A stretch of DNA of 64,000 nucleotides from IMGVR_UViG_3300009011_000001:1-64000, one strand, 5' to 3'; positions 17,101 to 64,000 are shown, counted from the stretch's first letter. The notes: generated by a model from the letters alone, not told the origin. Program-made: numbers and translations.

Positions 17101-20100
17101 GGCTGCTTTCTCCGGCTTCCTCGGTTGTTTCTTTAAGCTCTTCCAACTTCTTGTCGAGGTGTTTGTCCATTTCCTTAATGGCTTCGACAACCTTCTCGGA
17201 ACCAGTACCATCGCCACCTGCCCCGCCTTCCTTAGCAGCCAGTTTTTCTTTGCGGCGTCTGATAATGTCCTGCCACGACCAGTCACGAGTTCCGTCACCG
17301 TCCGTGTCTCCATGAACTTTCTCCTGATCCCAGCGAGACTTCATGAATTGCAGGATTTCCATTTGGACCTGAAGCTGCTGCCCACTGATCTCTACAGCGG
17401 CAAGTGACATCTCGTCATCGAGCATGCCAACAGCGCCGTTCTTGAACTTGCCCATCACAAAGTTCTTGAGGCCACGTCCTGCCGCCCCAATCATCTTGCC
17501 CAAGCCCTTATAGAACGCCATGGTTTTCTGACCGTACCACTTAGCGGCTTTACCCGCCATCTCAAGAGCACGTCCAGTTCCGTGGATGACCTTACCGCCA
17601 ACCGTGTACAGCAGGGAACCGTTTACGGTGTAGAACGATTTGTATTGATCGATCTCCTTTTGGGAAACGACCTCTACGCGGTTACCATCGGCATCCATCT
17701 CGTAGACTGGGCCTTTGATATCCTTGAGTGATGTGATGACCGCACCTTCAGCTGTACGGTACGCGCCCTTCTTCATGAGAACGGATCGAATCCTTGGTTC
17801 CGTATCCCCTGGCAGGTATGCGTCGAACTGCGTGAATTGATCGAGTACAGCACGACCAACAATCTTCGCAGCGCCCCACATTACGCCGTAAGTACCACGC
17901 ATGTAAGCCTTGGTACCTTTGGCCAACAAACCGCCCATCTTCAAACCAGCGCGTGAGAAGAACCCAGCAAGCGACTCACCTGTACCGCTGAACAGCCCTT
18001 GGTCAATGTCTTCTTGCGTCAACACGACTTCGTTCGTTCTTACGTCCTTAACGGGACCGGTGATGTCTTTAAGTTTCTCAACCGTTTTCTTGCTGTTGAT
18101 ATCGAAGTAGTAACCCTTACGAATATCGCGTGCCAACAGAGTCGGCTCTTCCTCCCCCGCTTTGTGTACGTCGGAAATACCAAACCCATCAAGCGCTTTG
18201 AATGGAAACTTTGCAGCTCCAACCGCAGACTTGATGCCAAACTTTGAAGCACTGAAGATCGAACCGTACGACCACTTGAGATACGTGCCAAGCATCTTGC
18301 CAGCGCTAAACAAGCCGCCTTTAAGTTTCTTCGCAGCACCGCCCGCACCCTCACGGATACTGGCATCGTACCAACGACGCTTGATCTCAGCGATTTGTTC
18401 CTGAATAGCTGAATCGAGATCGCCACTTGGACGACCAGGAGTTGGCGACCCATCTGGACCCGGAGGGCCCTCACCGGCGCTACCAGGGTTATTCGCACCA
18501 GCACTCGGAATCAGCTGAGCGATCAGACCGAGGAGTTCGCCATTTTGAGAGGACGAGCCAATCAGACGATCGAGCCGCAGATGCGTTTGCTCATCATGCG
18601 CTTTGATAACGTCTGGCCATTCGATCTGAGCCTGAACGGTTTGACTTGGAGTTGGGGAAGGACCACTCGGACCAGCGCCATCGGGACGGACAATGGAACG
18701 ACCGAGGTTACGGTTCAGGCCACGTTTAAAGATATCGACGCTATCGTTATTCGCGCCACGTTCAATGGCAGCCTGACGCTCTTCCTCCTTCTTGCGCTTA
18801 TCGACCATCAACTGTCGCCACTGTTCAGGCGACAGAGATTTCTTGAGCTTCTCTTCATCCTTCGGATCGAAGTCATCGCCGGAGTTCACGATCAGGTCGT
18901 AAACTTTATCCAGGTCAATGATGTCACCGCTGCTACCGTTGTAACGAGACAGACCAAGGTCACGCCAAACACGACGACCAGTAACGCCAGACAACAGATT
19001 CATCCGCGCACCGAATTCAGGTAGGCGGCTCTGCACTTCAGAGAACTTGTCGGCCACATCGAGACGATGGGTTTTGATTTCCTCTGAGTTGTCCATCTGT
19101 TCGCCTGTTGGAGACAGGCCAAACTTGGTAGCGAAGAATTCGATCAGCTCGTTTGCAATGTCTTCTGGTTCATCGCGCCAAGTATCAATCTTGACGTAAC
19201 GAGAAGGATTGAAACGATTAGCGCCTGCCATGTCCTTCATCAAGTGTCGACGAAGAGCACGTTTTGCTTGAAGCGAAATGTCGCCAGCGCCCATCTGACG
19301 GAGCAGGCTATCCACGCTATTACGCAGGGCTTCGCCGTTACTGTCGAGGAGCGCCATTTTGACGTGTTGCTTGTTCAGCGTGGAGCGATCAACGAAACCA
19401 CCGCTATAATGGCTCCATGCAGCCTCTTCGTGATCTTCACCGGTAACCAGGACTTTAAGCGAGCGGTCAATGCTAGCCATGTAGCCAGGCATGATGCTGG
19501 TAACCGATTCGTAGAACAGGTTATCCATGTACGCAGGCTTGTCGAGATCTTCCAGATCCTTACCGCGAATCGAACTGGTCGCACTGTAGGTGTCGAGCAT
19601 GCCTTTAAGGGCTTCTTCACCAAGACCCAAAATACCAGTACGAGTACCTTCCGATTTAGCGTATTCGTTCAATCGTTGAGGGATGGACGTCAACGCATCA
19701 CGAAGAACGTTATTGCCTTTGCTGAAGAACTTGTTACCGGCGATGTTCTTGCCGTAACGGTCAGACAGCATACTGATCAGATATTCAACGCCCTGAGCAG
19801 CAGCATCACCGGCAAAGCTACCCAGCATATCGCCAACCATGTGGCTACGCGACATACCCGGGCCGGACATTTGGTTGATCTGACCAAACACATCCAGACC
19901 AGCGCCCAATGCTTCACTGATGTTGCCTTTCAGCCCACTGAAATAATTCGAGGTGAACTTGTTAACAGTGTTGAGCGCGCCGTTTGCCAACTTGTTCGAC
20001 AGCTGTTGTTTTACAACGTCAGCATGCGTCATCTTGACAAAGTCAGGAAGCGCAGTGTTATCGAGGATGTTGTTGAGTGTTTGTTCGCTGCGTGCAAAGT

Positions 20101-20812
20101 GCTCACGCTGCAGACCAAACATCTTGATGCCAACATCCAGTTGACGGTACCCGATTTCCAGACTCTTCTGATGGTACTTGATCAGGATGTTATCCTGATA
20201 ACCGACCAGTCGACCAATGCCACGGCCGATAGAGCTGGACACCTGCATTTCTATTGCGAAGCGTTTCTGGTCACGAATGTCTCGAGCAGCTTCGGTGTAC
20301 GTGTCCTGCATCCGCTCAGCGGCTTGAGCCTTGAAGATCTCAGCCATACCGGCCAAGTTACCGTCAAGCTCAGACTGACGGCCGCTACCGCTGTACGAGG
20401 AGCTATTGCCCGAATCGCCAATGGCGTCTCGAACGCTCTTCGGCAGAAAGCGCAACAGGCTGCTTGCAGACCTGTCTTGACCGCCCTTCAATCGGCGCAG
20501 ATACGGATCGAGTTCTGCCTTGTTATCTTTAATGATATCGGCAATGCCGCGATCCAAGGCATCGTATGTATTGAGCGCCTGAGTGTAACCTTTCGGAAGC
20601 ACACCAGACAGCATACGGCGTACAAAGTCCCGGTTGATCAGCCGGTCTTTACCCGCCTTAACAAAACTTTCTGCCGCAGCGTGATAAGGCGTGCGGTCTC
20701 CCTTTTTCTTCTTGCCGCCCATATTGCCGGAGAAGTCAAAGTCGGCGTCCCCGAAGTCGAGGTCGTCGAAATCAGACAACTCGGGGAGGTCGTGATCGTC
20801 TTTTTTAGCCAT
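14105..20812 (-). CDS. Tail tape measure protein with C-terminal lytic transglycosylase (phiKZ gp181-like), 2235 aa
   Basis: SLT motifs AAVESGLDPNAS, AFGLFQFVKGTW, DPRANAILGACYL, LYAAHFLG; central TM segment; length. Start MAKKDD at 20812, because the longer ORF-track start overlaps the divergent RNAP gene. Confidence 0.92.
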   Translation of the reverse strand: MAKKDDHDLPELSDFDDLDFGDADFDFSGNMGGKKKKGDRTPYHAAAESFVKAGKDRLINRDFVRRMLSGVLPKGYTQALNTYDALDRGIADIIKDNKAELDPYLRRLKGGQDRSASSLLRFLPKSVRDAIGDSGNSSSYSGSGRQSELDGNLAGMAEIFKAQAAERMQDTYTEAARDIRDQKRFAIEMQVSSSIGRGIGRLVGYQDNILIKYHQKSLEIGYRQLDVGIKMFGLQREHFARSEQTLNNILDNTALPDFVKMTHADVVKQQLSNKLANGALNTVNKFTSNYFSGLKGNISEALGAGLDVFGQINQMSGPGMSRSHMVGDMLGSFAGDAAAQGVEYLISMLSDRYGKNIAGNKFFSKGNNVLRDALTSIPQRLNEYAKSEGTRTGILGLGEEALKGMLDTYSATSSIRGKDLEDLDKPAYMDNLFYESVTSIMPGYMASIDRSLKVLVTGEDHEEAAWSHYSGGFVDRSTLNKQHVKMALLDSNGEALRNSVDSLLRQMGAGDISLQAKRALRRHLMKDMAGANRFNPSRYVKIDTWRDEPEDIANELIEFFATKFGLSPTGEQMDNSEEIKTHRLDVADKFSEVQSRLPEFGARMNLLSGVTGRRVWRDLGLSRYNGSSGDIIDLDKVYDLIVNSGDDFDPKDEEKLKKSLSPEQWRQLMVDKRKKEEERQAAIERGANNDSVDIFKRGLNRNLGRSIVRPDGAGPSGPSPTPSQTVQAQIEWPDVIKAHDEQTHLRLDRLIGSSSQNGELLGLIAQLIPSAGANNPGSAGEGPPGPDGSPTPGRPSGDLDSAIQEQIAEIKRRWYDASIREGAGGAAKKLKGGLFSAGKMLGTYLKWSYGSIFSASKFGIKSAVGAAKFPFKALDGFGISDVHKAGEEEPTLLARDIRKGYYFDINSKKTVEKLKDITGPVKDVRTNEVVLTQEDIDQGLFSGTGESLAGFFSRAGLKMGGLLAKGTKAYMRGTYGVMWGAAKIVGRAVLDQFTQFDAYLPGDTEPRIRSVLMKKGAYRTAEGAVITSLKDIKGPVYEMDADGNRVEVVSQKEIDQYKSFYTVNGSLLYTVGGKVIHGTGRALEMAGKAAKWYGQKTMAFYKGLGKMIGAAGRGLKNFVMGKFKNGAVGMLDDEMSLAAVEISGQQLQVQMEILQFMKSRWDQEKVHGDTDGDGTRDWSWQDIIRRRKEKLAAKEGGAGGDGTGSEKVVEAIKEMDKHLDKKLEELKETTEEAGESSLLEDAADLSDIADHGGRKGRGGRGARGGGKKGWLRRTGGKMMEKGGKLVRKVPGGGMLARFGSWAGRGALAAATWAAPMLLEGAVALGSVLSAPVVIGALAVGGAAYVGYRMYKASEAEKFPLLYLRMTQYGVNPTDEKRVNMMVQLEGMVRRGVTVTKDGQASIDPGKMELGSVLDLFDAQDPERRNQLFMWIQNRFKPVFLAHCSAMQKIRNTTDLSSADDGIGDGDIETFLSTVDAPGMQKVYDDLATSPFDGKLTEDSGDVASAIKMVRGRRKLGGEQKKMKMDNAVATGNVDAVAAAATVGVAANGFGDSSQIAKGLIIQQSVRSGRLPTTVAGVAAGMKIQTSLDIPTAVRYKTYGLKEMKLDKCIQLQKVEEIYWPAVSYVGTSKATLNGNMDDLENRAIDIFKPANEVMRADVQKWVRFRFIPTFLQYAISVRRRYNGDAKNAPGNLTGVLMREVLDETTRAVADTPMGQTSVWKIANSPWPGELLEEMAGSTKSYIDALDRGDNAKVLDVKGMEAQKNQDPNDYGKTLLNTALGNQRANASGSGVNQSGPTLSNYAKIYGQGAVAGGAKGQSVGYGTGAMLMSGPSGTQVQHPGGGTGGDINSLPNNTGKGIDAMGPIITAAAKMVGFDPNIALNVAAVESGLDPNASSGIAFGLFQFVKGTWADMIRKYGATYGIAPNTPPSDPRANAILGACYLKENYEGLSPILGGNVSDVDLYAAHFLGLGGAKKFLAAPNNESSGNYVSSAAIENNKSVFYGPNGLRSVGEVKQELDRRIQIGKKKAGMGAAQGPKGGVAIDKSGAAPAFNTGGAEEDGQNTTGAGAAVSALDAANAANGAAAGTPSATQVTPRPSAPMTADIAQEVNGTAPTGGGAATPVADTGAAPAFVPPPAPKVGAQPTASRAAAADTVAKNYEQQAQASSDINGLLQQHLLVAQSMDGNILAIRQAIMQLVNKGTGGGSPGQPAPTPAPRQMEPARKSPVQTQRGQAVT

Positions 20813-20877
20813 TACGTTTCTCTCAACATAAAGGGTGGCTATATGGTTCATACCACTTCGACACAGGGACATTGTCC

Positions 20878-22548
20878 ATGAAAACCGATGTCTTGCCCGC
20901 GCTTCTTTGGATTCTTCATACGGAAGATGACGATCTAAGGCATCTAGCGCCAATCACTCGCCTCGACATTACGGAAGGCGCAAGCACCAACTTCCATGAT
21001 GACGGGCTGTTCTCGACTCGCATCTTCGGACCTGTGGGTTCGGTTGAGCGCGATGAGGTGTTTGCGAAGATCAAGTTGAACGTTCGGGTTCTTCACCCGA
21101 AGATCTATCGCGACCTGATTAACCTCAAGGCTCTTTATAAGGAAATCCTTGAGGGGACTCGAACAGCGAAGTTCGATGAAGCGGAAGGTGACTTTGTCCC
21201 GAGTGTCGATGCAGATGCCGAAACCGGCTATGCTTTCTTCATGAAGCATTTGGACAAGTTACAGTTCAAACGCACCGCATCTCCTGCACGTAACGAGCGT
21301 ATCGATTTCCTTGAGCGTTGGCGTCATCGCTTCACGCTCACCAACCTTCCCGTTATGCCTGCTGGTCTTCGAGACATTGAGATCGGCGAAGATGGCCGTT
21401 GGACGAAACACGAAATCAACGACTACTATTTCCGTGTGATGTACACCGCGCTGAACTTGCCGGCTAACCGGGATTCGGAGAACGTCATTTACGACGGTCC
21501 TCGACTGCTGCTGAACAAAGCGATCTACGACATCTATTGCTACGTCGAGCGAATCATCGGCGGCAAGAACGGGTTCATCCGGGACAAGTGGACTTCGCGT
21601 CGTGTTCTTTACGGAACCCGAAACGTACTGACCTCGATGGAAACGTCAGGTTATAGCCTCGATTCTCCAAACGTACCTGCATTCGACTCAACTGTACTCG
21701 GGACATTCCAGGCAGCGGTTGCTCTGGCTCCTGTGGTCGTGTTCTGGATGCGTACGGGTTACCTGTCGAAGATCATGTCGGCTGGTGAAGGCGACGTCAT
21801 GCTGGTCAACACGAAGACGCTCAAACCTGAATGGGTTGGGCTGACTCCGACCACGCGTGACCGCTGGACAACGTTTGATGGTTTGCGTGAAGTAATCAAC
21901 AGCCTTGTAGATATTGAAGCCCGTCATCGCCCGGTGATGATTGGCGATCACTACTTGTCGTTGGTTTATAATGGCGAGGGTACCTTTAAAGTATTCGACG
22001 ACATTGAAGATCTTCCGCAAGGCTTCGATCGCAAAGACGTTCACCCGATGACGCTCATTGAGCTTGTCTATCTGTCCGGCTATTCGAAATGGATCAAGTA
22101 CTTTATCGATGTGGTTCGTTATCCGATTAACGGTGACGACTCGACGTATCCTTCACGGATGCACGTTAAGACCACTTCGGTTGGTGAGATCCGTCGTGAG
22201 CTGGATAGTGGTTGGGAGCCCCTCCCGGGCGATGAGTTCTTGGCGGTTGAATATCCGAACTACAACCTTCGTGGTTACCATGACTCCGAGTCTCCTGCGC
22301 CATCTCGTCTGACCGGCCTTGGTGCCGACTTTGACGGTGACACCGGTTCGGGTACCGCAGTTATGACCAACGACGCGCTTGCAGAGACTGAAAAGTATCT
22401 CTCGACTCGCGAAGCATGGGTTAAGCCTTCTGGCGATCCTCGTGCACAAATCGACTACGACACTGCTGACTTCGTGATCAAGAACCTGACCGGCCGGTTC
22501 AATCACATCAAGCAGGTAAACCACAAGGCTAAAACTGAGAAGGGGTAA
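20878..22548 (+). CDS. Virion RNA polymerase beta-prime subunit with catalytic site (phiKZ gp180-like), 556 aa
   Basis: GLFSTRIFG at the N-terminus, GKNGFIRDKW..RR, and catalytic ADFDGD. Confidence 0.95.
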   Translation: MKTDVLPALLWILHTEDDDLRHLAPITRLDITEGASTNFHDDGLFSTRIFGPVGSVERDEVFAKIKLNVRVLHPKIYRDLINLKALYKEILEGTRTAKFDEAEGDFVPSVDADAETGYAFFMKHLDKLQFKRTASPARNERIDFLERWRHRFTLTNLPVMPAGLRDIEIGEDGRWTKHEINDYYFRVMYTALNLPANRDSENVIYDGPRLLLNKAIYDIYCYVERIIGGKNGFIRDKWTSRRVLYGTRNVLTSMETSGYSLDSPNVPAFDSTVLGTFQAAVALAPVVVFWMRTGYLSKIMSAGEGDVMLVNTKTLKPEWVGLTPTTRDRWTTFDGLREVINSLVDIEARHRPVMIGDHYLSLVYNGEGTFKVFDDIEDLPQGFDRKDVHPMTLIELVYLSGYSKWIKYFIDVVRYPINGDDSTYPSRMHVKTTSVGEIRRELDSGWEPLPGDEFLAVEYPNYNLRGYHDSESPAPSRLTGLGADFDGDTGSGTAVMTNDALAETEKYLSTREAWVKPSGDPRAQIDYDTADFVIKNLTGRFNHIKQVNHKAKTEKG

Positions 22549-57532: not shown

Positions 57533-58369
57533 TTACATCCTTGGCTTACCGCCCATGGATAGCTTCATGACCTTACGGTACTTGTCCGGATCCATCAGGA
57601 TCGCGAGCTTCGCCCACTTGACGTCAACGAATTCGTTGTACATCGTGTTGGCATCTGCGTAGCCGTCGATAATCTCGCGGACTCGACCAAGCGTGGCACC
57701 GCCACGAATGAAGCCTTCATCCAAGTCGATAATCAAGGTATTGTAAACGTGCGCTTTAACGGCAAGCACAACCATCTCACCGAAGTCCCGGTAGTACGGT
57801 TGTTTGATGTCGTTGAAGTTGGGCTCGTGACTGACCGTACAACGCAGCGCTGCGTCACCCATCACCTGGTTCGAGTCGTTGACAAGAACGGTGTTGTGGT
57901 TTAGCAACTGAACGTAGGCAGTCCCCATCATTGCAACGCCATTCGTGGCGCGGATGATGTTCCTGACATCTTTCAAGATGCCGGAGTTACGAGAGTCAAA
58001 TCCCGTAGCGGTAGAGCCCGCCAACCCTTGAGTCAATCCGTAGATCAGCTCATGAACTGTGCTGATTTTACGATTCCCCAATGCATGAGGAGGGAACCGA
58101 TAGATAATGTTCCAAGTGTCGACGTACTCACGATCGGCATCGCGCATCGGCAACAAGATTTCCGTACCGCCGACCAAGTTGCAGTCAATGGCGACACGAC
58201 CATCGATGACGAGTTCCCGAATCTTTTCATCGAGGCTGATCGAGTCAACGTTGTCGAAGTAACGGTCTTGACGCGTCGGATCGTAACGTTTTGCAGTAAA
58301 AGCTTGTTGTAAAATCTCGCGAGGGATTTCCCTCATTACACGTTGGATAGCTACGCTGATAGGCGTCAT
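57533..58369 (-). CDS. Virion structural protein (phiKZ gp42-like), 278 aa
   Basis: AGGAG RBS. MTPISVAIQRVMREIPREILQQAF start typical of the recalled family; divergent from phuZ. Confidence 0.65.
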   Translation of the reverse strand: MTPISVAIQRVMREIPREILQQAFTAKRYDPTRQDRYFDNVDSISLDEKIRELVIDGRVAIDCNLVGGTEILLPMRDADREYVDTWNIIYRFPPHALGNRKISTVHELIYGLTQGLAGSTATGFDSRNSGILKDVRNIIRATNGVAMMGTAYVQLLNHNTVLVNDSNQVMGDAALRCTVSHEPNFNDIKQPYYRDFGEMVVLAVKAHVYNTLIIDLDEGFIRGGATLGRVREIIDGYADANTMYNEFVDVKWAKLAILMDPDKYRKVMKLSMGGKPRM

Positions 58370-58431
58370 GTCACGTACGCTCCTGACAAACAATCTATAT
58401 TCATATCAGCAAAGAAAAGGAACACAAACCA

Positions 58432-59436
58432 ATGACCTCCGGCCAATTGATTCAGTCGAAAACTCGCAGTGTGACCTTCTACGCCTGTGGCGGTCCTGGC
58501 GCCAATTTGCTGCGCACTCATCGCGAAGATCATCCTCTGGCTAACGCCTCGGCGATTGCTGATGAGAAGTACTGCTTCATCGACACCAGTATTGCCAACC
58601 TGGCTGGCGTCACTCTGGAAGACACTTACGTTCTGGAAGGTCTCGACGGCTCGGGTTCCGATCGCCCTCGTAACGCCAAAGCGATCAAGGAAGCCATGCC
58701 GGCCATCCTGAACAAGTTCAAGCCAGGCGACATCAACATCGTTCTGTTCAGCGCCGCTGGCGGTACCGGTTCGACTGCAGGTCCAATCCTGATCGAAGAA
58801 CTGCTGAAGGCCGGTAAGAAAGTGTTCGCAATCATCAGCGGTGCTCACGGCACCCTGAAGGCAACTGCAAACACCATCGCTACCCTGACCGGTCTGGAAG
58901 GCACCGTCAAACGTGTCAACCGTCCGGTGGTCATGTCGTATCGCGAAAACGATCCGACCAAGAACAATGCCGCCAACAACGTCGTTGCTCTGATGACCAT
59001 GTCGGCCCTGTCTCTGCTGTGCTCCGGCAAGAACATCCAGCTGGACGGCGCAGATATCGGCAACCTGGTCGACTATCCTGCTGTGACTCACTTCCCGGCT
59101 TCTCTGGCCATGCTCGACGTGTACGTCAACGAAGATCAACTGATCAACGAAGCCACCAGCGCTATCGCTCACCTCGCTCTGCTGAAGAACGAAGATGCGG
59201 TAATGCCGGCGATCAACCCAGCCTACGGCAAGTATGGCTACCTGCCAGCAGAAGCTGCTGAACGTTACAAAGAGTCTTTCCACTATGTGGTCAGCAACTC
59301 TCGCCTGAAAGGCGTCCTGGAAAAGCTGCTCCAGCGTCGTGAAGAGCTCGAGTCAGCTCAAGCCGTGATTGAGCGCCAAACCAGCCTGTCGACGCCGAAC
59401 GTGAAGATCGACGAAGACACCGGCCTGGTGTTCTAA
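58432..59436 (+). CDS. phuZ: PhuZ tubulin-like spindle protein, 334 aa
   Basis: YACGGPGANL, FIDTS, GSGSDR, G-box SAAGGTGS, T7-loop LDGAD, acidic-hydrophobic tail IDEDTGLVF. Confidence 0.95.
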   Translation: MTSGQLIQSKTRSVTFYACGGPGANLLRTHREDHPLANASAIADEKYCFIDTSIANLAGVTLEDTYVLEGLDGSGSDRPRNAKAIKEAMPAILNKFKPGDINIVLFSAAGGTGSTAGPILIEELLKAGKKVFAIISGAHGTLKATANTIATLTGLEGTVKRVNRPVVMSYRENDPTKNNAANNVVALMTMSALSLLCSGKNIQLDGADIGNLVDYPAVTHFPASLAMLDVYVNEDQLINEATSAIAHLALLKNEDAVMPAINPAYGKYGYLPAEAAERYKESFHYVVSNSRLKGVLEKLLQRREELESAQAVIERQTSLSTPNVKIDEDTGLVF

Positions 59437-59506: not shown

Positions 59507-59740
59507 ATGGAAGCAACGTTACTGTTCAAATGTGATCGCTGCAACAACGTCGACCACATGAAAGCCACCGGTCCATCCGGCACCGGTCAGATGCTCTGCC
59601 ATCGCTGCCAGCATGGCGAGTGGCACGATCAATTCCCAGAAGAACAATACGACTCGTCGTTGCACGACGTGTTCAATGCACCAGCAGGTGCGTCGGCATC
59701 GCCATCGTTCCTCGGCGGTCCAGCCTTCCAGGTCGATTAG
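59507..59740 (+). CDS. Zinc-ribbon protein (CDRC...CHRC), 77 aa
   Basis: Two CxxC pairs; GAAAGG RBS; terminator at 59763-59784. Confidence 0.75.
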   Translation: MEATLLFKCDRCNNVDHMKATGPSGTGQMLCHRCQHGEWHDQFPEEQYDSSLHDVFNAPAGASASPSFLGGPAFQVD

Positions 59741-59762: not shown

Positions 59763-59803
59763 TAGGGGGCTTAAACGCCCCCTACTGCTAAATCTTTCTT
59801 TTT
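59763..59803 (+). terminator. Intrinsic terminator
   Basis: TAGGGGGC-ttaaac-GCCCCCTA, then a T tract. Confidence 0.75.
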
Positions 59804-59889
59804 GATGTGGTAGTGAGGGTCATTACGTTAAAGTTTGTCAGATAGCTTTGTAGACCCATTCAGATAGTATCTTATCACAGTAAGGCCAA

Positions 59890-59918
59890 ATACTGTGGTA
59901 ATTAACCGAGAGCATTTA
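59890..59918 (+). promoter_or_regulatory. Promoter-like motif shared with the uvsX leader
   Basis: ATACTGTGGTAATTAACCGAGAGCATTTA; overlaps a CACAGTA/TACTGTG inverted repeat. Confidence 0.45.
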
Positions 59919-59919
59919 C

Positions 59920-60300
59920 ATGAAAGCTACTCTGATTGATGTAAATCCAATTCTGGAACGACTCAGCAAACGTGAAGGAGTTGGCTTCAATGCTCCAGTG
60001 ATGGAGAGCTGGGTTGCGCGCACTTACGGAAGGCGTTGGGATGTCCAGTGTGTTAGCAGTCGATTGCTTCACGACTTCGGTGCCTCTAAGGGCGGATCGT
60101 TCGAACAGCTCTCGTTCGCCAAGTCGATGGACACCCTGGGTTACGACCTGATCGGTGCTTTGCCCGCTCCGGGTGAGTTCAAGATGCCATTGAACGGCGG
60201 TAAGAGTCCGACGTTTTTGGTGCATTTGTCGGATGAAGGGTTTTTAGTGATCGGAGATCCAAATGAAGTTAACCGCCATCGGAGAGACCCGAGTAATTGA
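59920..60300 (+). CDS. Array gene 1, hypothetical, 126 aa
   Basis: GAG RBS; overlaps the next gene by 38 nt. Confidence 0.8.
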   Translation: MKATLIDVNPILERLSKREGVGFNAPVMESWVARTYGRRWDVQCVSSRLLHDFGASKGGSFEQLSFAKSMDTLGYDLIGALPAPGEFKMPLNGGKSPTFLVHLSDEGFLVIGDPNEVNRHRRDPSN

Positions 60301-60706
60301 TTTCAGCGAGGTAGTTCGCTGGACCATCAAGAACATCCAGCGGAATCTTCCCGATCTACGAGTCAATGAAGATGCGGTTGAAGCGACGGTCGCTGATATT
60401 GTGGACCGTACGCTCACGATCCAGATGAAGTGGACAAAGGTCATGCGGTACGAGCCAGAAGAAGATTACATGGTGCGGATGGGTGCTCGTGCGCATCCAG
60501 AAGGCTGGCTCTTTATCCAAGACGTTATCGAAGAGACACTTGCGTTCCTACAGACGTTTCTTACATTACCGACGTGGAACATCGTGTCAATGCGCATCTC
60601 CGGTAGCTTTGCCCACATTGAACTATGTGAAGATTTCCGAATAAAAGACTGGATGGAAAAACATGCTAAGGAATATGGAGTTCATAACGCAAACAAACGG
60701 TGGTAA
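60263..60706 (+). CDS. Array gene 2, hypothetical, 147 aa
   Basis: GGAG RBS; overlaps the next gene by 44 nt. Confidence 0.82.
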   Translation: MKLTAIGETRVIDFSEVVRWTIKNIQRNLPDLRVNEDAVEATVADIVDRTLTIQMKWTKVMRYEPEEDYMVRMGARAHPEGWLFIQDVIEETLAFLQTFLTLPTWNIVSMRISGSFAHIELCEDFRIKDWMEKHAKEYGVHNANKRW

Positions 60707-61268
60707 ACGGTTTGCTACGCTTGACATTGAAAGTCAAGTGAAAGAAATGAAGAAGTTCCTGACCAGCCGCTGGGATGATCCATTTCGTCCTCGGCAGTTA
60801 GCTTACAAGATGATCAAAGAAATCATCAACCACATCGTCCGTCAATCCAATGAATCTCTCCTAACCATTGCAAAGAGGTACTCTAAAGACTCAGCCGAAT
60901 ACTACTCCCTGCTGCCTTATGTAGCCCGGTTTGACCACGACTTCCGAAGCGCATTGCATGAACTCGCTGGCGACGATAACGTGATCGGTAACGTTGAGTT
61001 CTCCGAAGACAGCGCACTCATGGTTGTTGAAATATTTTCGTTGGAAACCAATCATGGACAAACCAGATTCGACCACTACATTGACGGTCTGCGAGACGAA
61101 GGAGTCTACATCCACCGAGATGTCGAAAAGCTCCTCCAAGAGTGGAAGTCCACAGACCAAAGATTTCATTTTCGACATCAGGGCACTGGACTTAGGAACC
61201 TTAGCCGACAAGCTGCTGATCTCCCCGGATCTCTTGCTGAAAGCAACATTGAACTACCTTCTCTTTGA
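60663..61268 (+). CDS. Array gene 3, hypothetical, 201 aa (C-terminal tail overlaps the next gene)
   Basis: Protein-like to about KLLQEWKS; start could also be 60675. Confidence 0.75.
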   Translation: MLRNMEFITQTNGGKRFATLDIESQVKEMKKFLTSRWDDPFRPRQLAYKMIKEIINHIVRQSNESLLTIAKRYSKDSAEYYSLLPYVARFDHDFRSALHELAGDDNVIGNVEFSEDSALMVVEIFSLETNHGQTRFDHYIDGLRDEGVYIHRDVEKLLQEWKSTDQRFHFRHQGTGLRNLSRQAADLPGSLAESNIELPSL

Positions 61269-61500
61269 CGATTGCACCGATTGGCAAAGAATGGGCGAGA
61301 AGTTCTCCCAGGATCCGGCTGAAATGATTCCGCTAAGCTACCATCTGGATCAGTGGTGGATGGAGAAAGCAGAAATGATGAATGATCTGTTCGCAGACCT
61401 CATCGCAGCTCGGCCGTTTAAATGGAAGCGGGTATTCGTGTGCGAAGATGAGTTCGCCAAGATTGTAGTCACATCACTCGAGAAAGATCCATGGCCCTAA
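61120..61500 (+). CDS. Array gene 4, hypothetical, ~126 aa
   Basis: Protein-like from TKDFIFDIR onward; start uncertain (61054 or 61120). Confidence 0.7.
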   Translation: MSKSSSKSGSPQTKDFIFDIRALDLGTLADKLLISPDLLLKATLNYLLFDDCTDWQRMGEKFSQDPAEMIPLSYHLDQWWMEKAEMMNDLFADLIAARPFKWKRVFVCEDEFAKIVVTSLEKDPWP

Positions 61501-61832
61501 AGACCTTCTTAATTGATCTGGTCGAAGCAAGACTCCCCCAAGAGTTCGGTTTCCCGGATCTGGGGGTCGACGGGGAAGTCTTGTTCAACATGATGGTTAA
61601 GGCATCCATTTGGGAAGAGGACATCATCTTCGACCTACGCTCATGGCTGTGTGATCAGAATTACTTCAGCCAAGGCGATCAGATCCTCGACCAGTTCTGG
61701 ACGTTCCGGATTTTCATCTGGGACGTCATCAAGCATCAGAACAAAGGCATGCCGATTAACTTTGGCAAGCTGGATTCAACTCAGATACTGGACAATCAGT
61801 TCGGCATCATCAACATCAAACTACCGGAGTAG
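61491..61832 (+). CDS. Array gene 5, hypothetical, 113 aa
   Basis: 10-nt overlap with the upstream gene. Confidence 0.82.
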   Translation: MALKTFLIDLVEARLPQEFGFPDLGVDGEVLFNMMVKASIWEEDIIFDLRSWLCDQNYFSQGDQILDQFWTFRIFIWDVIKHQNKGMPINFGKLDSTQILDNQFGIINIKLPE

Positions 61833-61837
61833 CCTCA

Positions 61838-62251
61838 ATGGCAAGAGCACCAGCGCCTGAGAGGAAATCGGTTATCCTCGACGTCAGGAGCGATATCGCA
61901 GAATCAATAATCCGTCTGGGAGACTATCTTCCGCCAACGGAACGACACCACTTCATCTCTTCTTCTGTAAGCATCATGCTGGCAGGTGTCATGCTTGATG
62001 ATAACAACAGCACTGCGTTAGATGCCATGGATCGACTGGTGTCTGACACAGGGCTGGCTCAGCCATCTCAGTCCGCAGGGCTGCTTGGCGAAATGCTTGT
62101 ACTTAACAACGTATTCCGCAGTAGTTATAAGCATCACGACGGTATTCTGGACGAACTTGAGCAGCTAATGCCCAACGACCCCCGCTGCAATATCGAGGAA
62201 GTTTTCAACGTGGAGTTCTCTCCCGATGGGAATTTTCTGAGGATACGTTAG
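61838..62251 (+). CDS. Array gene 6, hypothetical, 137 aa
   Basis: GGAG RBS. Confidence 0.82.
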   Translation: MARAPAPERKSVILDVRSDIAESIIRLGDYLPPTERHHFISSSVSIMLAGVMLDDNNSTALDAMDRLVSDTGLAQPSQSAGLLGEMLVLNNVFRSSYKHHDGILDELEQLMPNDPRCNIEEVFNVEFSPDGNFLRIR

Positions 62252-62643
62252 TGCCAGCATACATCATCGACATAGACCTTCCGGCGATCAGCGACCTTGA
62301 GTTGGTCGCTGATCGTCTTATGCACCTGCAGGAATATGAGGAAGAAACTCGAGAGGTTGCGATGACCGATGTTACAGACGCTTTGTTGCATTATTGGTTG
62401 CTCGCAGACTTTGACAGACTGAACCTCTTGCTTGACGACATCAGGGCCGACCGGCCAGGATTCAGGGATCATGAGATCTTTGAAGCTTTTGAACGTCTGG
62501 CCAATCCCTTGAAAGCAGGATACCGCCAACTTAACAGTAGCTCTAAAGCCATTCAGCGCGAACTGCTTGAGGTCGATGAAATCATCACCTACGAAGTGAA
62601 AGTTGACAAGAACTTTAGAACTATTGGGTTCTCTATTTATTGA
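62251..62643 (+). CDS. Array gene 7, hypothetical, 130 aa
   Basis: GAGGA RBS; TAGTG overlap. Confidence 0.82.
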   Translation: MPAYIIDIDLPAISDLELVADRLMHLQEYEEETREVAMTDVTDALLHYWLLADFDRLNLLLDDIRADRPGFRDHEIFEAFERLANPLKAGYRQLNSSSKAIQRELLEVDEIITYEVKVDKNFRTIGFSIY

Positions 62644-62652
62644 GGAGCTGTC

Positions 62653-62973
62653 ATGGAGTCAGCGCAGAACAAGTTCATTTTCGATACGCCCAAAGATGGT
62701 GGACTTAATCTTGAAATGCTCCAAAAGACTATTGCCTTCTTCGCCACAGAGCTGAACGATCAAAACCAATTCCTCAGCGACTATCAGTATACGTTTTTGA
62801 GGGAGTCCTTCGGTGCTAATTCAAAGGCCATTGAGGACGTCTGCAACAAAGCCCTGGACATTTTGGAATATAGTGGCGTCATGAGAGAATTGATCGTGCC
62901 CGGTCAAATCCTTAATGATGTAAGCTGCGATCTGAACGAAGACTGCGGTAGAATAATCTTGGAGTGGTTATGA
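62653..62973 (+). CDS. Array gene 8, hypothetical, 106 aa
   Basis: GAGGAG RBS. Confidence 0.82.
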   Translation: MESAQNKFIFDTPKDGGLNLEMLQKTIAFFATELNDQNQFLSDYQYTFLRESFGANSKAIEDVCNKALDILEYSGVMRELIVPGQILNDVSCDLNEDCGRIILEWL

Positions 62974-63335
62974 ACGCATTAGCCAAGGTAGATAAAGATA
63001 CGGTGTTCCTGATCGAAGAGAACGCCTTCAACCGATTCAAGACCAAGGAAGAAATGATGGGTCATCTCGCCATCCTACGTGGCATGGCTGAACAGATCAC
63101 CGAGAGCGTACCCGTCAGTCTGGAGATTGCCATCTGGCCATCGACCGACCTGTTCCTTATGGGACACCCTGCGAAGTCCCCTGTTAGAACCTTGTACTCT
63201 GTACTTTCAGAAGTCCTCGCTTCTTCAGGATTCTCGATAGGGGTGCTCATGACCCTTGAGGTTGAGAACCATGAACCATACGACACCACCGCCATCAGGG
63301 TGGAAGGCCGCTACAGAATCTTTACCGTCCACTAA
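62970..63335 (+). CDS. Array gene 9, hypothetical, 121 aa
   Basis: GGAG RBS; ATGA overlap. Confidence 0.82.
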   Translation: MNALAKVDKDTVFLIEENAFNRFKTKEEMMGHLAILRGMAEQITESVPVSLEIAIWPSTDLFLMGHPAKSPVRTLYSVLSEVLASSGFSIGVLMTLEVENHEPYDTTAIRVEGRYRIFTVH

Positions 63336-63765
63336 TGTCCATGTAGAGCGCTTCCTCTTTGATATCACGAAGGAGGTCAGCGCATTCGTGGACAACTCTG
63401 ACTATGGGGTAGAGGACTTAACTTACGATGTTCCGCGAATCGTAGCTTACTTCCAATTCGCCACAACCGACGTCGAGCTGTTAGCGGAGTATTTCTGGAC
63501 AAAGTACATTGCCGGTACGCCGAAGGATTCGATCATTCTTGCGTCACAGGCCGATAAGCAATTGTACCCGGATATGAACGAACAGTTTGAATCACAAGGA
63601 ATTGTGAAAGCCGACATTGTCGGCATAGACGTCGATTATACGGAGCATTCAACTAAAGGCCTTATCGAATGTTTTGTATTTGTCAGAGCCAAAGTTCGGA
63701 GTAAACCAGATGGTCTACCAGCGGGTAGTGGGCTTTTGCCCCGACTTAGTCACAAGGATCGATGA
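63271..63765 (+). CDS. Array gene 10, hypothetical, 164 aa
   Basis: GAGG RBS before ATG 63271; 65-nt overlap. Confidence 0.75.
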   Translation: MNHTTPPPSGWKAATESLPSTNVHVERFLFDITKEVSAFVDNSDYGVEDLTYDVPRIVAYFQFATTDVELLAEYFWTKYIAGTPKDSIILASQADKQLYPDMNEQFESQGIVKADIVGIDVDYTEHSTKGLIECFVFVRAKVRSKPDGLPAGSGLLPRLSHKDR

Positions 63766-64000
63766 GCTCGTAGCCGAGAAATTCGAATACGAGTATTTTG
63801 ATGATCCGATCAGTGATGCCAGAGCTGAGATGATTCGTGAGATGGACAGCTACTGGTACCGCCGGCAGCTTTTCGAGGCCTTTGGTGGCATCAATCACGT
63901 TGCTCTGCTCCGCAATGAATTGCAAGAGCTTGCTAAGGTCGTTGAGGGCCACGAGCTCCTTGAGGCATGTTGTCTCATGTATCGTCCATTCATCCTGCAC
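63710..64000 (+). CDS. Array gene 11, hypothetical, truncated by the window end; not in the ORF track
   Basis: GGAG RBS. MVYQRVVGFCPDLVTRIDELVAEKFEYEYFDDP...ELLEACCLMYRPFILH, open to the end of the window. Confidence 0.75.
   Translation, partial: MVYQRVVGFCPDLVTRIDELVAEKFEYEYFDDPISDARAEMIREMDSYWYRRQLFEAFGGINHVALLRNELQELAKVVEGHELLEACCLMYRPFILH

What the first reader, a model, noticed from the sequence alone, without database searches (positions are those of the whole stretch)
59920..64000. Eleven translationally coupled genes that look like deeply diverged paralogs: possible hetero-oligomeric machine
Seen: 11 consecutive plus-strand ORFs, mostly 106-164 aa, overlapping or at most 9 nt apart, with no internal terminator. 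Nine begin with a hydrophobic strand ending in Asp (ATLID, RVID, ATLD, FIFD, FLID, VILD, YIID, FIFD, FLFD); the other two are VFLIE and VVGFCPD. All have an acidic helical middle and a late beta-hairpin (FLVHLSDEGFLVI; IVSMRISGSFAHIEL; GNVEFSEDSALMVV; KRVFVCEDEFAKIVV; STQILDNQFGIINI; FNVEFSPDGNFLRI; YEVKVDKNFRTIGF; DVSCDLNEDCGRIIL; TAIRVEGRYRIFTV; VGIDVDY...LIECFVF). Recalled, to be verified: the equivalent phiKZ block between PhuZ and DNA polymerase is conserved, and gp47/gp48 there were implicated in protein import into the phage nucleus. Inference: one ancestral fold expanded into a stoichiometric ring, filament or adaptor set serving nuclear import or replication.
Basis: partly seen in the sequence, partly recalled or inferred. 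Interest (0 to 1): 0.8.

Follow-up and report, generated by a model that had tools for sequence, protein, structure and literature searches.

The report
Same-fold small-gene array in nucleus-forming phage
A jumbo phage that builds a nucleus-like shell carries, between its tubulin and DNA polymerase genes, a tightly packed operon of eleven small acidic proteins that appear to share one fold and sit where phage phiKZ keeps its cargo-specific nuclear import adaptors.

Summary
Eleven plus-strand genes lie at 59920-64129; the last runs 129 nt past the window. Junctions range from -149 to +9 nt, and there is no convincing internal terminator. All eleven are under purifying selection (dN/dS 0.06-0.27) and keep the same order in seven related metagenomic phages.

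The contig is a chimallivirus: DUF7484, PhuZ, the array, SH3DP, divergent DNA polymerase, chimallin and nvRNAP beta.

The two members I could fold (g1, g7) both give strand, 4-6 helices, then a hairpin. Both models hit the same small uncharacterised chimallivirus proteins and nothing in the PDB.

Sequence evidence for common ancestry is weak. Only g1 and g11 share a clear motif. However, the best profile alignments among the eleven are in register far more often than chance (p 2e-8).

Orthologous anchors fix the position. g2 matches the phiKZ gp43 N-domain and g12 matches gp49, so g3-g11 are positional counterparts of phiKZ gp44-48, which include Imp2 and Imp4.

In phiKZ TnSeq only some of these genes are essential. 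That argues against one obligate machine.

Best reading: a diversified one-fold family of separately acting adaptor-like factors. The function itself is inferred, not shown.

The parts
59765..59804 (+). Intrinsic terminator closing the upstream small Zn-ribbon-like gene: stem GGGGGC, loop TTAAAC, stem GCCCCC, then a T-rich run. It marks the upstream boundary of the array's transcription unit.
   Evidence: Read. Conserved in 7 genomes, with compensatory stem changes (GAGAGC/GCTCTC) in L003 and L011.
59867..59902 (+). Conserved non-coding element GTATCTTATCACAG...ATAnTGTGGTAAT, containing the inverted repeat CACAG/CTGTG, 20-55 nt upstream of g1. Candidate promoter or 5' leader hairpin of the operon.
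   Evidence: Near-invariant in the 7-genome alignment. Unique in the window. Its function is not tested.
59920..60300 (+). g1, 126 aa, pI 6.8. The most conserved member. Strand TLID, helices, hairpin FLVHL-SDEG-FLVIG.
   Evidence: AF2 pLDDT 77, pTM 0.74: E3-7, helices, E98-103, E108-112. 76-89% identity in the clade; only 8 clusters among 5.8 billion proteins. dN/dS 0.07-0.09.
60263..60706 (+). g2, 147 aa. Homolog of the N-terminal ~155 aa of phiKZ gp43, 201phi2-1 gp75 and RTH11 WJJ55220. Motif TW..V...G.F..IE..EDFRI.DW...HAKEY.
   Evidence: hmmsearch E 1.2e-4 and 1.6e-4 after adding RTH11; these were already the 2nd and 3rd best hits, and in register, before that. hhalign to the RTH11 protein E 1.4e-4.
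60675..61268 (+). g3, 197 aa. The domain ends near residue 125. A conserved tail runs to ...FHFRHQG, followed by an unconserved stretch that overlaps g4.
   Evidence: Alignment of 8 orthologs. hhalign to g4 over 113 collinear columns, E 0.009.
61120..61500 (+). g4, 126 aa from this ATG (61054 is an alternative start). Conserved from FIFD onwards. Overlaps g3 by 149 nt.
   Evidence: Gene callers elsewhere start it later, giving 86-100 aa. An independent sample shows no indel here.
61491..61832 (+). g5, 113 aa, pI 4.4. FLID strand, hairpin QILDNQFGIINI.
61838..62251 (+). g6, 137 aa, pI 4.7. VILD strand, hairpin NVEFSPDGNFLRI.
   Evidence: The hairpin aligns with those of g8 and g3.
62251..62643 (+). 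g7, 130 aa, pI 4.5, GTG start overlapping the g6 stop. The best-modelled member.
   Evidence: AF2 pLDDT 88, pTM 0.82: E3-7, six helices (five long), E113-119, E124-129. Foldseek hits are small chimallivirus proteins, TM 0.4-0.53; nothing in the PDB. Weak ortholog RTH11 WJJ55218, E 6e-4.
62653..62973 (+). g8, 106 aa, pI 4.2. FIFD strand, hairpin at the very C-terminus.
   Evidence: 95-column collinear hhalign alignment to g10.
62970..63335 (+). g9, 121 aa. VFLIE strand, hairpin AIRVEGRYRIFTV.
63271..63765 (+). g10, 164 aa. A 25-aa leader encoded inside g9, then the FLFD strand, a longer hairpin loop, and a tail overlapping g11.
63710..64000 (+). g11, 139 aa; runs off the window to 64129. N-terminus VVGFCPDL. 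Its late hairpin FILHLSDEGFFAID is nearly the same as that of g1.
   Evidence: Read on L001. blastp g1 against g11 E 0.004 in the 24-sequence set. hhalign E 3e-4 and 0.006.

Best explanation
The block is one operon of a nucleus-forming jumbo phage (chimallivirus).

Shown:
- It begins after a conserved terminator and a conserved leader element.
- It runs through eleven translationally coupled cistrons into the SH3DP and DNA polymerase genes.
- Each cistron is a real gene under purifying selection. Each is kept as a single copy, in the same order, in eight related genomes.

Shown for g1 and g7, inferred for the other nine:
- Each product is a domain of about 105-125 residues.
- An N-terminal strand (usually three hydrophobic residues then Asp) and a C-terminal hairpin flank 4-6 helices. 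I infer that the three strands pair into one small sheet against the helices.
- All but g1 are acidic.

Inferred:
- The eleven arose by old tandem duplication of one fold.
- They diverged mainly on the helical surfaces until sequence similarity was lost.
- Related phages carry equivalent arrays at the same place.

Inferred from position only:
- They act one by one as adaptor- or chaperone-like binders. Each would recognise a different partner and hand it to the shared import apparatus (Imp1/PicA) of the phage nucleus.
- This is what phiKZ Imp2 and Imp4 do, and those two lie in the corresponding stretch between the gp43-like gene and SH3DP.
- Tight coupling would give coordinated early or middle expression with the polymerase. 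It need not reflect fixed stoichiometry in a complex.
For: Gene reality and conservation.

Chimallivirus identity and synteny:
- DUF7484, PhuZ, SH3DP and divDNApol.
- Chimallin, phrog_4795, E 7e-36, and nvRNAP beta.

Fold:
- AF2 models of g7 and g1 have the same element order.
- Both models hit the same BFVD entries: A0A6B7EY96, A0A7D3QIV5, A0A7D7IG98, Eowyn A0A7R8MK22 and Mortimer A0A2H5BKL2.
- Otherwise the hits are almost only small proteins of chimalliviruses, several per phage.
- One hit, a 127-aa Ea35-70 protein, matches the length of Ea357_212, which lies inside that phage's PhuZ-to-polymerase block.

Shared architecture of all eleven:
- 33/55 best hhalign alignments are in register against 22% for column-shuffled profiles (Fisher 1.6e-6, MWU 2e-8).
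- The result holds with whole-length normalisation, 56% against 30%.
- Only 1/11 is in register against SH3DP.
- g3/g4 and g8/g10 give end-to-end collinear alignments.

Cross-clade:
- Block proteins of phiKZ, Ea35-70 and RTH11 align in register with the window profiles in 44% of cases. Shuffled sequences and non-block neighbours both give 30% (p 3e-4 and 4e-4).

Positional equivalence with Imp2/Imp4:
- g2 matches phiKZ gp43.
- g12 matches gp49, E 8e-9.
- Imp2 is orf47 and Imp4 is orf48. A later preprint calls them cargo-specific adaptors.

Separate action:
- Mixed essentiality in phiKZ TnSeq.
- Unequal evolutionary rates.
Against: - No array protein has detectable sequence similarity to Imp2 or Imp4.
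- Kokontis et al. state that Imp2 and Imp4 are conserved only in Pseudomonas phiKZ-like phages.
- Imp2 and Imp4 themselves were not among the top 50 structural hits. The only hit at the Imp4 position (a 128-aa 201phi2-1 protein, probably gp80) has TM 0.23.
- Only 2 of 11 folds were predicted, from shallow alignments. Only 1-2 of the five AF2 models were confident in each case.
- All Foldseek E-values are above 1e-3.
- In-register alignments could reflect a convergent strand-helix-hairpin pattern rather than descent.
- A whole-protein motif search is not significant.
- No expression, localisation or interaction data exist for this uncultured phage. No RNA run was listed.
Confidence: 0.4

Rival explanations
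1. The eleven paralogs assemble into one stoichiometric hetero-oligomer (ring, filament or adaptor set). Translational coupling sets the subunit ratios, and the assembly serves nuclear import or replication.
For: - Overlapping or abutting cistrons without an internal terminator.
- Strict retention of all eleven in fixed order in eight genomes.
- A shared fold with an edge strand that could pair between subunits (the pairing is speculative).
Against: - Rates differ widely between members: 88% against 38% identity to the same relative.
- The number of genes in the equivalent stretch varies between clades. Counting the genes between PhuZ and SH3DP: about 11 here, 10 in RTH11, 8 in Ea35-70. Between the gp43-like gene and SH3DP, phiKZ has 6 against 9 here.
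- phiKZ orf44, 45 and 46 tolerate transposon insertions, while orf43, 47 and 48 do not.
- Imp2 and Imp4 were each selected by a different cargo.
- Gene overlap is ordinary in phage operons.
Confidence: 0.15
2. The array encodes accessory subunits of the phage replisome, for example substitutes for clamp, clamp loader or primase helpers. They would work with the clamp-less divergent family B polymerase encoded at the end of the same operon.
For: - Same strand and same transcription unit as SH3DP and divDNApol.
- Iyer et al. note that this polymerase lacks a classical clamp, and suggest that its upstream neighbour may be a subunit.
- The gp43-like gene, gp47, gp48, gp49 and gp50 are all essential in phiKZ.
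Against: - No DNA-binding or nucleotide-binding motif was found.
- Ten of the eleven are acidic (pI 4.2-5.8), which is poor for binding DNA.
- No Pfam, PHROG or NCBIfam match.
- They evolve much faster than the polymerase, which is 88% identical where the array is 38-88%.
- The two characterised positional counterparts act in import, not in synthesis.
Confidence: 0.15
3. The eleven are not paralogs. They would be unrelated small acidic early or middle proteins (host take-over, anti-defence, DNA mimics) that gathered in a permissive genomic slot and merely share a common strand-helix-hairpin pattern.
For: - Pairwise and profile similarity is barely above the null: mean hhalign score 14.2 against 12.8-13.1.
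- The whole-protein motif search is not significant.
- Every phiKZ and Ea35-70 counterpart sits in its own PHROG of unknown function.
- Acidic composition and fast evolution are typical of phage-host interface proteins.
Against: - In-register alignments far exceed both the null and the SH3DP outgroup.
- g1 and g11 share a 13-residue hairpin motif.
- g1 and g7, which have no sequence similarity, have the same predicted topology and hit the same BFVD proteins.
- The same architecture is enriched in the syntenic blocks of three other clades but not in their neighbouring genes.
Confidence: 0.2

Closest known systems
phiKZ Imp2 (orf47) and Imp4 (orf48), cargo-specific factors for import into the phage nucleus (Kokontis et al., bioRxiv 10.1101/2024.03.27.586873)
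   Same: - Same genomic slot: downstream of the gp43-like gene and directly upstream of SH3DP and the divergent DNA polymerase, in a chimallivirus.
- Similar size (127-178 aa).
- By eye, an N-terminal hydrophobic strand (Imp2 FVVINISD, Imp4 RVFIVF) and a late hairpin.
- Overlapping small genes on the same strand.
   Different: - No detectable sequence similarity.
- Not recovered as structural hits for g1 or g7.
- Their fold was not predicted here.
- They are described as restricted to Pseudomonas phiKZ-like phages.
- No functional data exist for the window's genes.
phiKZ gp43 / 201phi2-1 gp75 / PhiPA3 gp039 family (uncharacterised; no transposon insertions in phiKZ)
   Same: - g2 aligns with residues ~95-155 of these proteins through a conserved hairpin-plus-helix motif (EDFRI.DW...AKEY).
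- It occupies the same position, early in the array.
   Different: - The Pseudomonas-phage proteins are about 350 aa with extra C-terminal domains. g2 is a 147-aa single domain.
- The match is weak: E about 1e-4 in a 99-sequence set.
Small uncharacterised proteins between PhuZ and the DNA polymerase of Erwinia phage Ea35-70 (Ea357_208-215) and Xanthomonas phage RTH11 (WJJ55217-55226)
   Same: - Same slot, same strand, overlapping genes of 83-229 aa.
- N-terminal motifs such as VLLIDLKP, VVLDLKP and VIIDRNP resemble g1 TLIDVNP and g7 YIIDIDLP.
- Structural hits of g7 and g1 come from such phages.
   Different: - Only g2 and g7 have marginal sequence orthologs in RTH11.
- Gene number and lengths differ.
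- Each protein is filed in a separate PHROG of unknown function.
SH3DP (PF20287) with divDNApol (PF20286)
   Same: They are the next two genes of the same operon (64126 onwards). SH3DP is translationally coupled to g11.
   Different: SH3DP is a beta-rich SH3 fold and is slow-evolving. It is not part of the eleven: only 1/11 of its alignments with them is in register.

Membership tests
phiKZ Imp2 family (phrog_17816) | Sequence homology to phiKZ gp47 / PhiPA3 gp44 | tested here: not met
   The PHROG scan of g1-g10 gave no family at E up to 0.1. hmmsearch of all 11 profiles against gp47 gave E of 0.5 or more. hhalign best score 16.7, out of register.
phiKZ Imp2 family (phrog_17816) | Position in the small-gene stretch between the gp43-like gene and SH3DP / DNA polymerase | tested here: met
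   g2 matches gp43, g12 matches gp49, and the polymerase is PF20286. g3-g11 lie between these anchors.
phiKZ Imp2 family (phrog_17816) | Required for import of a specific cargo (Nlp1) and itself imported through Imp1 | not testable with these tools
   Needs infection genetics and microscopy. The phage is known only from soil and rhizosphere metagenomes.
phiKZ Imp4 family (phrog_26533) | Sequence or structural similarity to phiKZ gp48 | tested here: not met
   No PHROG hit. hmmsearch E of 0.5 or more. The g7 model hits the 128-aa 201phi2-1 protein at the Imp4 position only at TM 0.23, E 1.2. That protein has no BLAST similarity to gp48 either.
phiKZ gp43-like family | Conserved hairpin and helix motif around residues 95-155 (TW..., EDxRI, AK) | tested here: met
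   This applies to g2 only. hmmsearch E 1.2e-4 (phiKZ gp43) and 1.6e-4 (201phi2-1 gp75), in register. RTH11 WJJ55220 hhalign E 1.4e-4. The match is marginal in absolute terms.
   Met for the two members folded (g1, g7), which also share BFVD hits. The other nine were not folded. A crude propensity predictor agreed with AF2 at only Q3 0.57, so it decides nothing.
   No pair reaches a convincing E-value; the best is 3e-4 to 6e-3 for g1/g11. Scores are only slightly above the null (p 0.002-0.02). Alignments are strongly in register (p 2e-8; p 2e-5).
Chimalliviridae (genome context) | Encodes chimallin, multisubunit nvRNAP and the divergent polymerase, in phiKZ-like synteny | tested here: met
   phrog_4795 nuclear shell protein, E 7e-36, and phrog_2987, E 4e-122. 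PF20286, E 4e-207. PhuZ tblastn hits only jumbo phages.

The most novel reading that the evidence does not exclude
The variable stretch between the gp43-like gene and SH3DP in all chimalliviruses, including phiKZ Imp2 and Imp4, would be one ancient fold family. It would be a phage-encoded repertoire of import adaptors that grows and shrinks by tandem duplication to match the set of proteins each phage must bring into its nucleus. This phage's eleven members would then be the largest intact, single-operon example so far.
Probability: 0.25. Interest if true: 0.8.

Novelty: new variant of a known kind. Interest (0 to 1): 0.55.

Why it matters
How the phage nucleus selects its cargo is an open question.

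- **What is known.** Imp1 has many cargo-specific surfaces, and a few adaptors (Imp2, Imp4, Imp5, Imp7) are known only in phiKZ-like Pseudomonas phages.
- **What would change.** If the small genes at this conserved position share one fold across the family, adaptors could be recognised by position and fold in any chimallivirus, even though sequence searches fail.
- **What it would explain.** These genes are orphans in every database, and some are essential while others are not.
- **What could be tested.** Each member should bind Imp1 and a distinct cargo.
- **If the function is different.** A structurally uniform, rapidly diverging eleven-gene array would still be a useful case of fold-preserving diversification in a phage.
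- **Literature.** In the papers I could search I found no description of such a family.

Tried and rejected
- **Nucleotide search.** Megablast of the region against 50,697 phage records found no match.
- **Family libraries.** Pfam, PHROGs and NCBIfam gave nothing for g1-g10.
- **ESM Atlas.** For g7 and g2 it returned only unnamed clusters below the lead threshold, and it holds no model of either.
- **Structural search.** Foldseek of the g7 model against the PDB gave nothing above TM 0.3. The ribosomal protein rows are chance.
- **Wide sequence searches for g1.** The 5.8-billion-protein search found only 8 close clusters. The profile search of 1.84 billion representatives added one divergent ortholog and one remote relative.
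- **Similarity within the array.** blastp all-vs-all found only g1/g11.
- **Shared motif.** A de novo search over whole proteins (widths 10 and 13) did no better than random control sets (z -0.6). Restricted to the first 45 residues it was marginal (p about 0.01 at width 6, 0.11 at width 8).
- **Secondary structure.** A Chou-Fasman-type predictor on the family alignments was too inaccurate to use (Q3 0.57 against AF2).
- **Repeated promoter.** The conserved upstream element is unique in the window.
- **Assembly error or frameshift at the g3/g4 overlap.** Rejected. Eight genomes keep both frames, and an independent sample has no indel.
- **Expression.** No RNA run was listed.
- **Papers without relevant data.** The ASO functional-genomics paper and the PCH45 Tn-seq paper have nothing on these genes.

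Full report
**What is there**

The window is the first 64 kb of IMG/VR contig IMGVR_UViG_3300009011_000001 (248,574 bp). Window and contig coordinates coincide.

From 59920 to the window end there are eleven consecutive plus-strand ORFs. The eleventh ends at 64129, read on locus L001.

My gene calls, using start codons with a GGAG/GAGG-like site 5-9 nt upstream:

| Gene | Coordinates | Length (aa) |
|---|---|---|
| g1 | 59920-60300 | 126 |
| g2 | 60263-60706 | 147 |
| g3 | 60675-61268 | 197 |
| g4 | 61120-61500 | 126 |
| g5 | 61491-61832 | 113 |
| g6 | 61838-62251 | 137 |
| g7 | 62251-62643 | 130 |
| g8 | 62653-62973 | 106 |
| g9 | 62970-63335 | 121 |
| g10 | 63271-63765 | 164 |
| g11 | 63710-64129 | 139 |

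- The junctions are -38, -32, -149, -10, +5, -1, +9, -4, -65 and -56 nt.
- A twelfth gene (64126-64518) overlaps g11 by 4 nt.
- The consensus scan finds no more terminator-like sites than in shuffles. Only one weak site is on the plus strand, inside g5.

g3 is longer than stated. g3 and g4 overlap by 149 nt. The next coupled gene belongs to a different family.

**Are these real genes?**

- All eleven, plus the twelfth, are present once each and in the same order in seven other metagenomic genomes: L003, L006, L008, L011, L012, L013 and L014. Identity to the window proteins ranges from 88% (g1) down to about 30% (g9-g11 in L014).
- A short, more distant contig (L015) carries a g1-like and a g2-like gene with the same 38-nt overlap.
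- Pairwise dN/dS against three relatives is 0.06-0.27 wherever dS is not saturated.
- An independent soil sample from 2023 holds near-identical DNA with 15 substitutions and no indels. Twelve of the 15 fall on third codon positions of the called frames.
- At the g3/g4 overlap, the g3 frame is conserved up to ...FHFRHQG and the g4 frame from ...FIFD. So only about 25 nt are constrained in both frames, and the rest of the overlap is slack.

**Context**

The contig is a chimallivirus with the canonical phiKZ-type order:

1. a DUF7484 gene on the minus strand;
2. a PhuZ tubulin (58432-59436; at most 35% identical to PhuZ of cultured jumbo phages);
3. a 77-aa Zn-ribbon-like gene;
4. the array;
5. 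SH3DP (PF20287);
6. the divergent family B polymerase (PF20286, E 4e-207);
7. two further genes;
8. the nuclear shell protein chimallin (phrog_4795, E 7e-36);
9. an nvRNAP beta subunit.

Upstream of g1 there is a hairpin terminator at 59765-59804. Its stem shows compensatory changes in two relatives. A conserved 35-nt element at 59867-59902 follows it and is unique in the window. These mark the likely start of the transcription unit.

The phage comes from rhizosphere and soil metagenomes. No RNA run was listed.

**Do the eleven share a fold?**

Only two structure predictions were allowed.

- **g7** (7-sequence alignment): pLDDT 88, pTM 0.82. Elements: strand 3-7; helices 10-23, 34-51, 55-66, 73-84, 86-89 and 92-105; strands 113-119 and 124-129.
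- **g1** (12 sequences): pLDDT 77, pTM 0.74. Elements: strand 3-7, helices, a short extra strand at 43-46, more helices, strands 98-103 and 108-112, then a terminal helix.

The two proteins have no detectable sequence similarity yet show the same order of elements. One caveat: in each case only one or two of the five models were confident.

Foldseek against BFVD gave no hit below E 1e-3 for either model. Even so, the top 30-40 hits of both are almost exclusively small uncharacterised proteins of chimalliviruses and close kin: PhiEaH1, EL, Phabio, Noxifer, Psa21, Ea35-70, Mortimer, RisingSun, Eowyn, RP12, PhiPA3 gp038/039 and 201phi2-1. Several phages contribute more than one hit. TM-scores reach 0.53-0.57. 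Five entries are hit by both models.

The PDB search for g7 found nothing (TM below 0.3).

**Sequence-level evidence for paralogy is weak, and I report it as such**

- blastp finds only g1/g11, which share F[LI][VL]HLSDEGF[LF][VA]I. The equivalent hairpin turn (D/E-G-F) is kept in both families in all relatives.
- hhalign between the eleven family profiles (8-9 sequences each) gives best E-values of 0.006-0.08. Mean scores are only slightly above reversed or column-shuffled profiles: 14.2 against 12.8-13.1, p 0.002-0.02.
- A de novo motif search over whole proteins does no better than random sets of control segments.
- Restricted to the first 45 residues, the motif search is marginal.
- The strict pattern of three hydrophobic residues followed by D or E is found in 7/11 array proteins against 22% of control proteins.

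The position of the best local alignments, however, is far from random. In 33 of 55 pairs the aligned segments lie at the same relative place in the domain, against 22% for shuffled profiles (Fisher 1.6e-6, Mann-Whitney 2e-8). With plain full-length normalisation the figures are 56% against 30%, and only 1 of 11 against SH3DP. Permissive alignments of g3/g4 and g8/g10 run collinearly from the N-terminal strand to the hairpin.

This shows a shared linear architecture for the set. It does not by itself separate descent from convergence.

**Relation to other phages**

- No array protein matches any Pfam, PHROG or NCBIfam model.
- g12 matches phiKZ gp49 (E 8e-9).
- g2 matches RTH11 WJJ55220. Through it, g2 matches the N-terminal ~155 residues of phiKZ gp43 and 201phi2-1 gp75 (E about 1e-4, in register, with a recognisable EDxRI...AK motif).
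- These two anchors bracket g3-g11. That makes them the positional counterparts of phiKZ gp44, 44.1, 45, 46, 47 and 48.
orf47 is Imp2, needed for import of Nlp1 and itself imported through Imp1. orf48 is Imp4, needed for import of host TopA. Later work calls them cargo-specific adaptors.
- The block proteins of phiKZ, Ea35-70 and RTH11 align in register with the window's profiles in 44% of comparisons. Their shuffled versions and neighbouring non-block proteins both give 30% (p 3e-4 and 4e-4).
- They carry the N-terminal motif in 15/26 cases against 8/27.
- Several have strikingly similar N-termini: Ea35-70 VLLIDLKP, VVLDLKP and VIIDRNP, and phiKZ gp41.1 LLLIDYPE, compared with g1 TLIDVNP and g7 YIIDIDLP.
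- Each of these proteins sits in its own PHROG of unknown function.
- I found no paper that describes them as one family.
- Imp2 and Imp4 themselves were not recovered by sequence or by the two structural searches. The link to them is therefore positional and pattern-level only.

**How it most likely works**

Shown:
- a conserved, coupled operon of eleven real genes;
- ten of the eleven products are acidic (pI 4.2-5.8; g1 6.8);
- the same fold topology in two members.

Inferred:
- all eleven are copies of one small alpha/beta domain;
- their helical surfaces have diverged.

Inferred from position:
- they act as separate adaptor- or chaperone-like binders for nucleus-related traffic, as Imp2 and Imp4 do.

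Two observations favour separate action over one machine. First, rates differ greatly along the array. Second, in phiKZ TnSeq, orf44, 45 and 46 tolerate insertions (6, 11 and 9 sites), while orf43, 47, 48, 49 and 50 have none.

I give this reading 0.4, the hetero-oligomer 0.15, replisome accessory subunits 0.15, and unrelated convergent small proteins 0.2.

**Novelty and score**

The gene kind is known: small chimallivirus genes next to the polymerase, two of which are import adaptors in phiKZ. What appears new is the recognition that they form a same-architecture array, anchored by orthologs at both ends across clades. This phage has an unusually regular eleven-member version.

The functional claim is untested, and the fold claim rests on 2 of 11 models. 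Interest 0.55.

Noticed in passing
window 61120-61268: g3 and g4 overlap by 149 nt in different frames. Across eight genomes the g3 frame is conserved only up to ...FHFRHQG and the g4 frame only from ...FIFD, so about 25 nt are doubly constrained. Automatic gene callers elsewhere start g4 after the g3 stop and so lose its N-terminal strand.
   Followed up: partly
window 59507-59740: A 77-aa protein with two CxxC pairs (Zn-ribbon-like) lies between PhuZ and the array. It is conserved in relatives (82 aa in L003). It has no Pfam or PHROG match.
   Followed up: partly
window 59765-59804 and 59867-59902: A terminator hairpin whose stem shows compensatory changes in two relatives. It is followed by a conserved element containing the CACAG/CTGTG inverted repeat just upstream of g1. 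The element is unique in the window and could be a promoter or a leader hairpin.
   Followed up: partly
L001 15695-18320 (contig 64126-66751): SH3DP (PF20287) is coupled to g11 and is followed by the divergent family B polymerase (PF20286). The polymerase is 88% identical to that of L003, so it evolves much more slowly than most of the array.
   Followed up: yes
L004 14209-17751 (contig about 68830-72372): A chimallin homolog (653 aa, phrog_4795) and an nvRNAP beta subunit lie downstream. The chimallin is too divergent for phmmer to find the solved chimallin structures.
   Followed up: partly
window 14105-20953 (minus strand): A 2282-aa ORF, the largest in the window. It was not examined.
   Followed up: no
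window 58366-59283 (minus strand) and many others: Long antisense ORFs lie opposite real genes (for example 305 aa inside PhuZ, and 695 aa opposite the polymerase). They are probably a by-product of codon composition rather than genes.
   Followed up: no
L017 (Xanthomonas phage RTH11) and L018 (201phi2-1): The gp43-like protein varies in length: 147 aa here, 229 aa in RTH11, about 350 aa in Pseudomonas phages. The shared part is the N-terminal domain, which suggests domain accretion or fusion within the array.
   Followed up: partly
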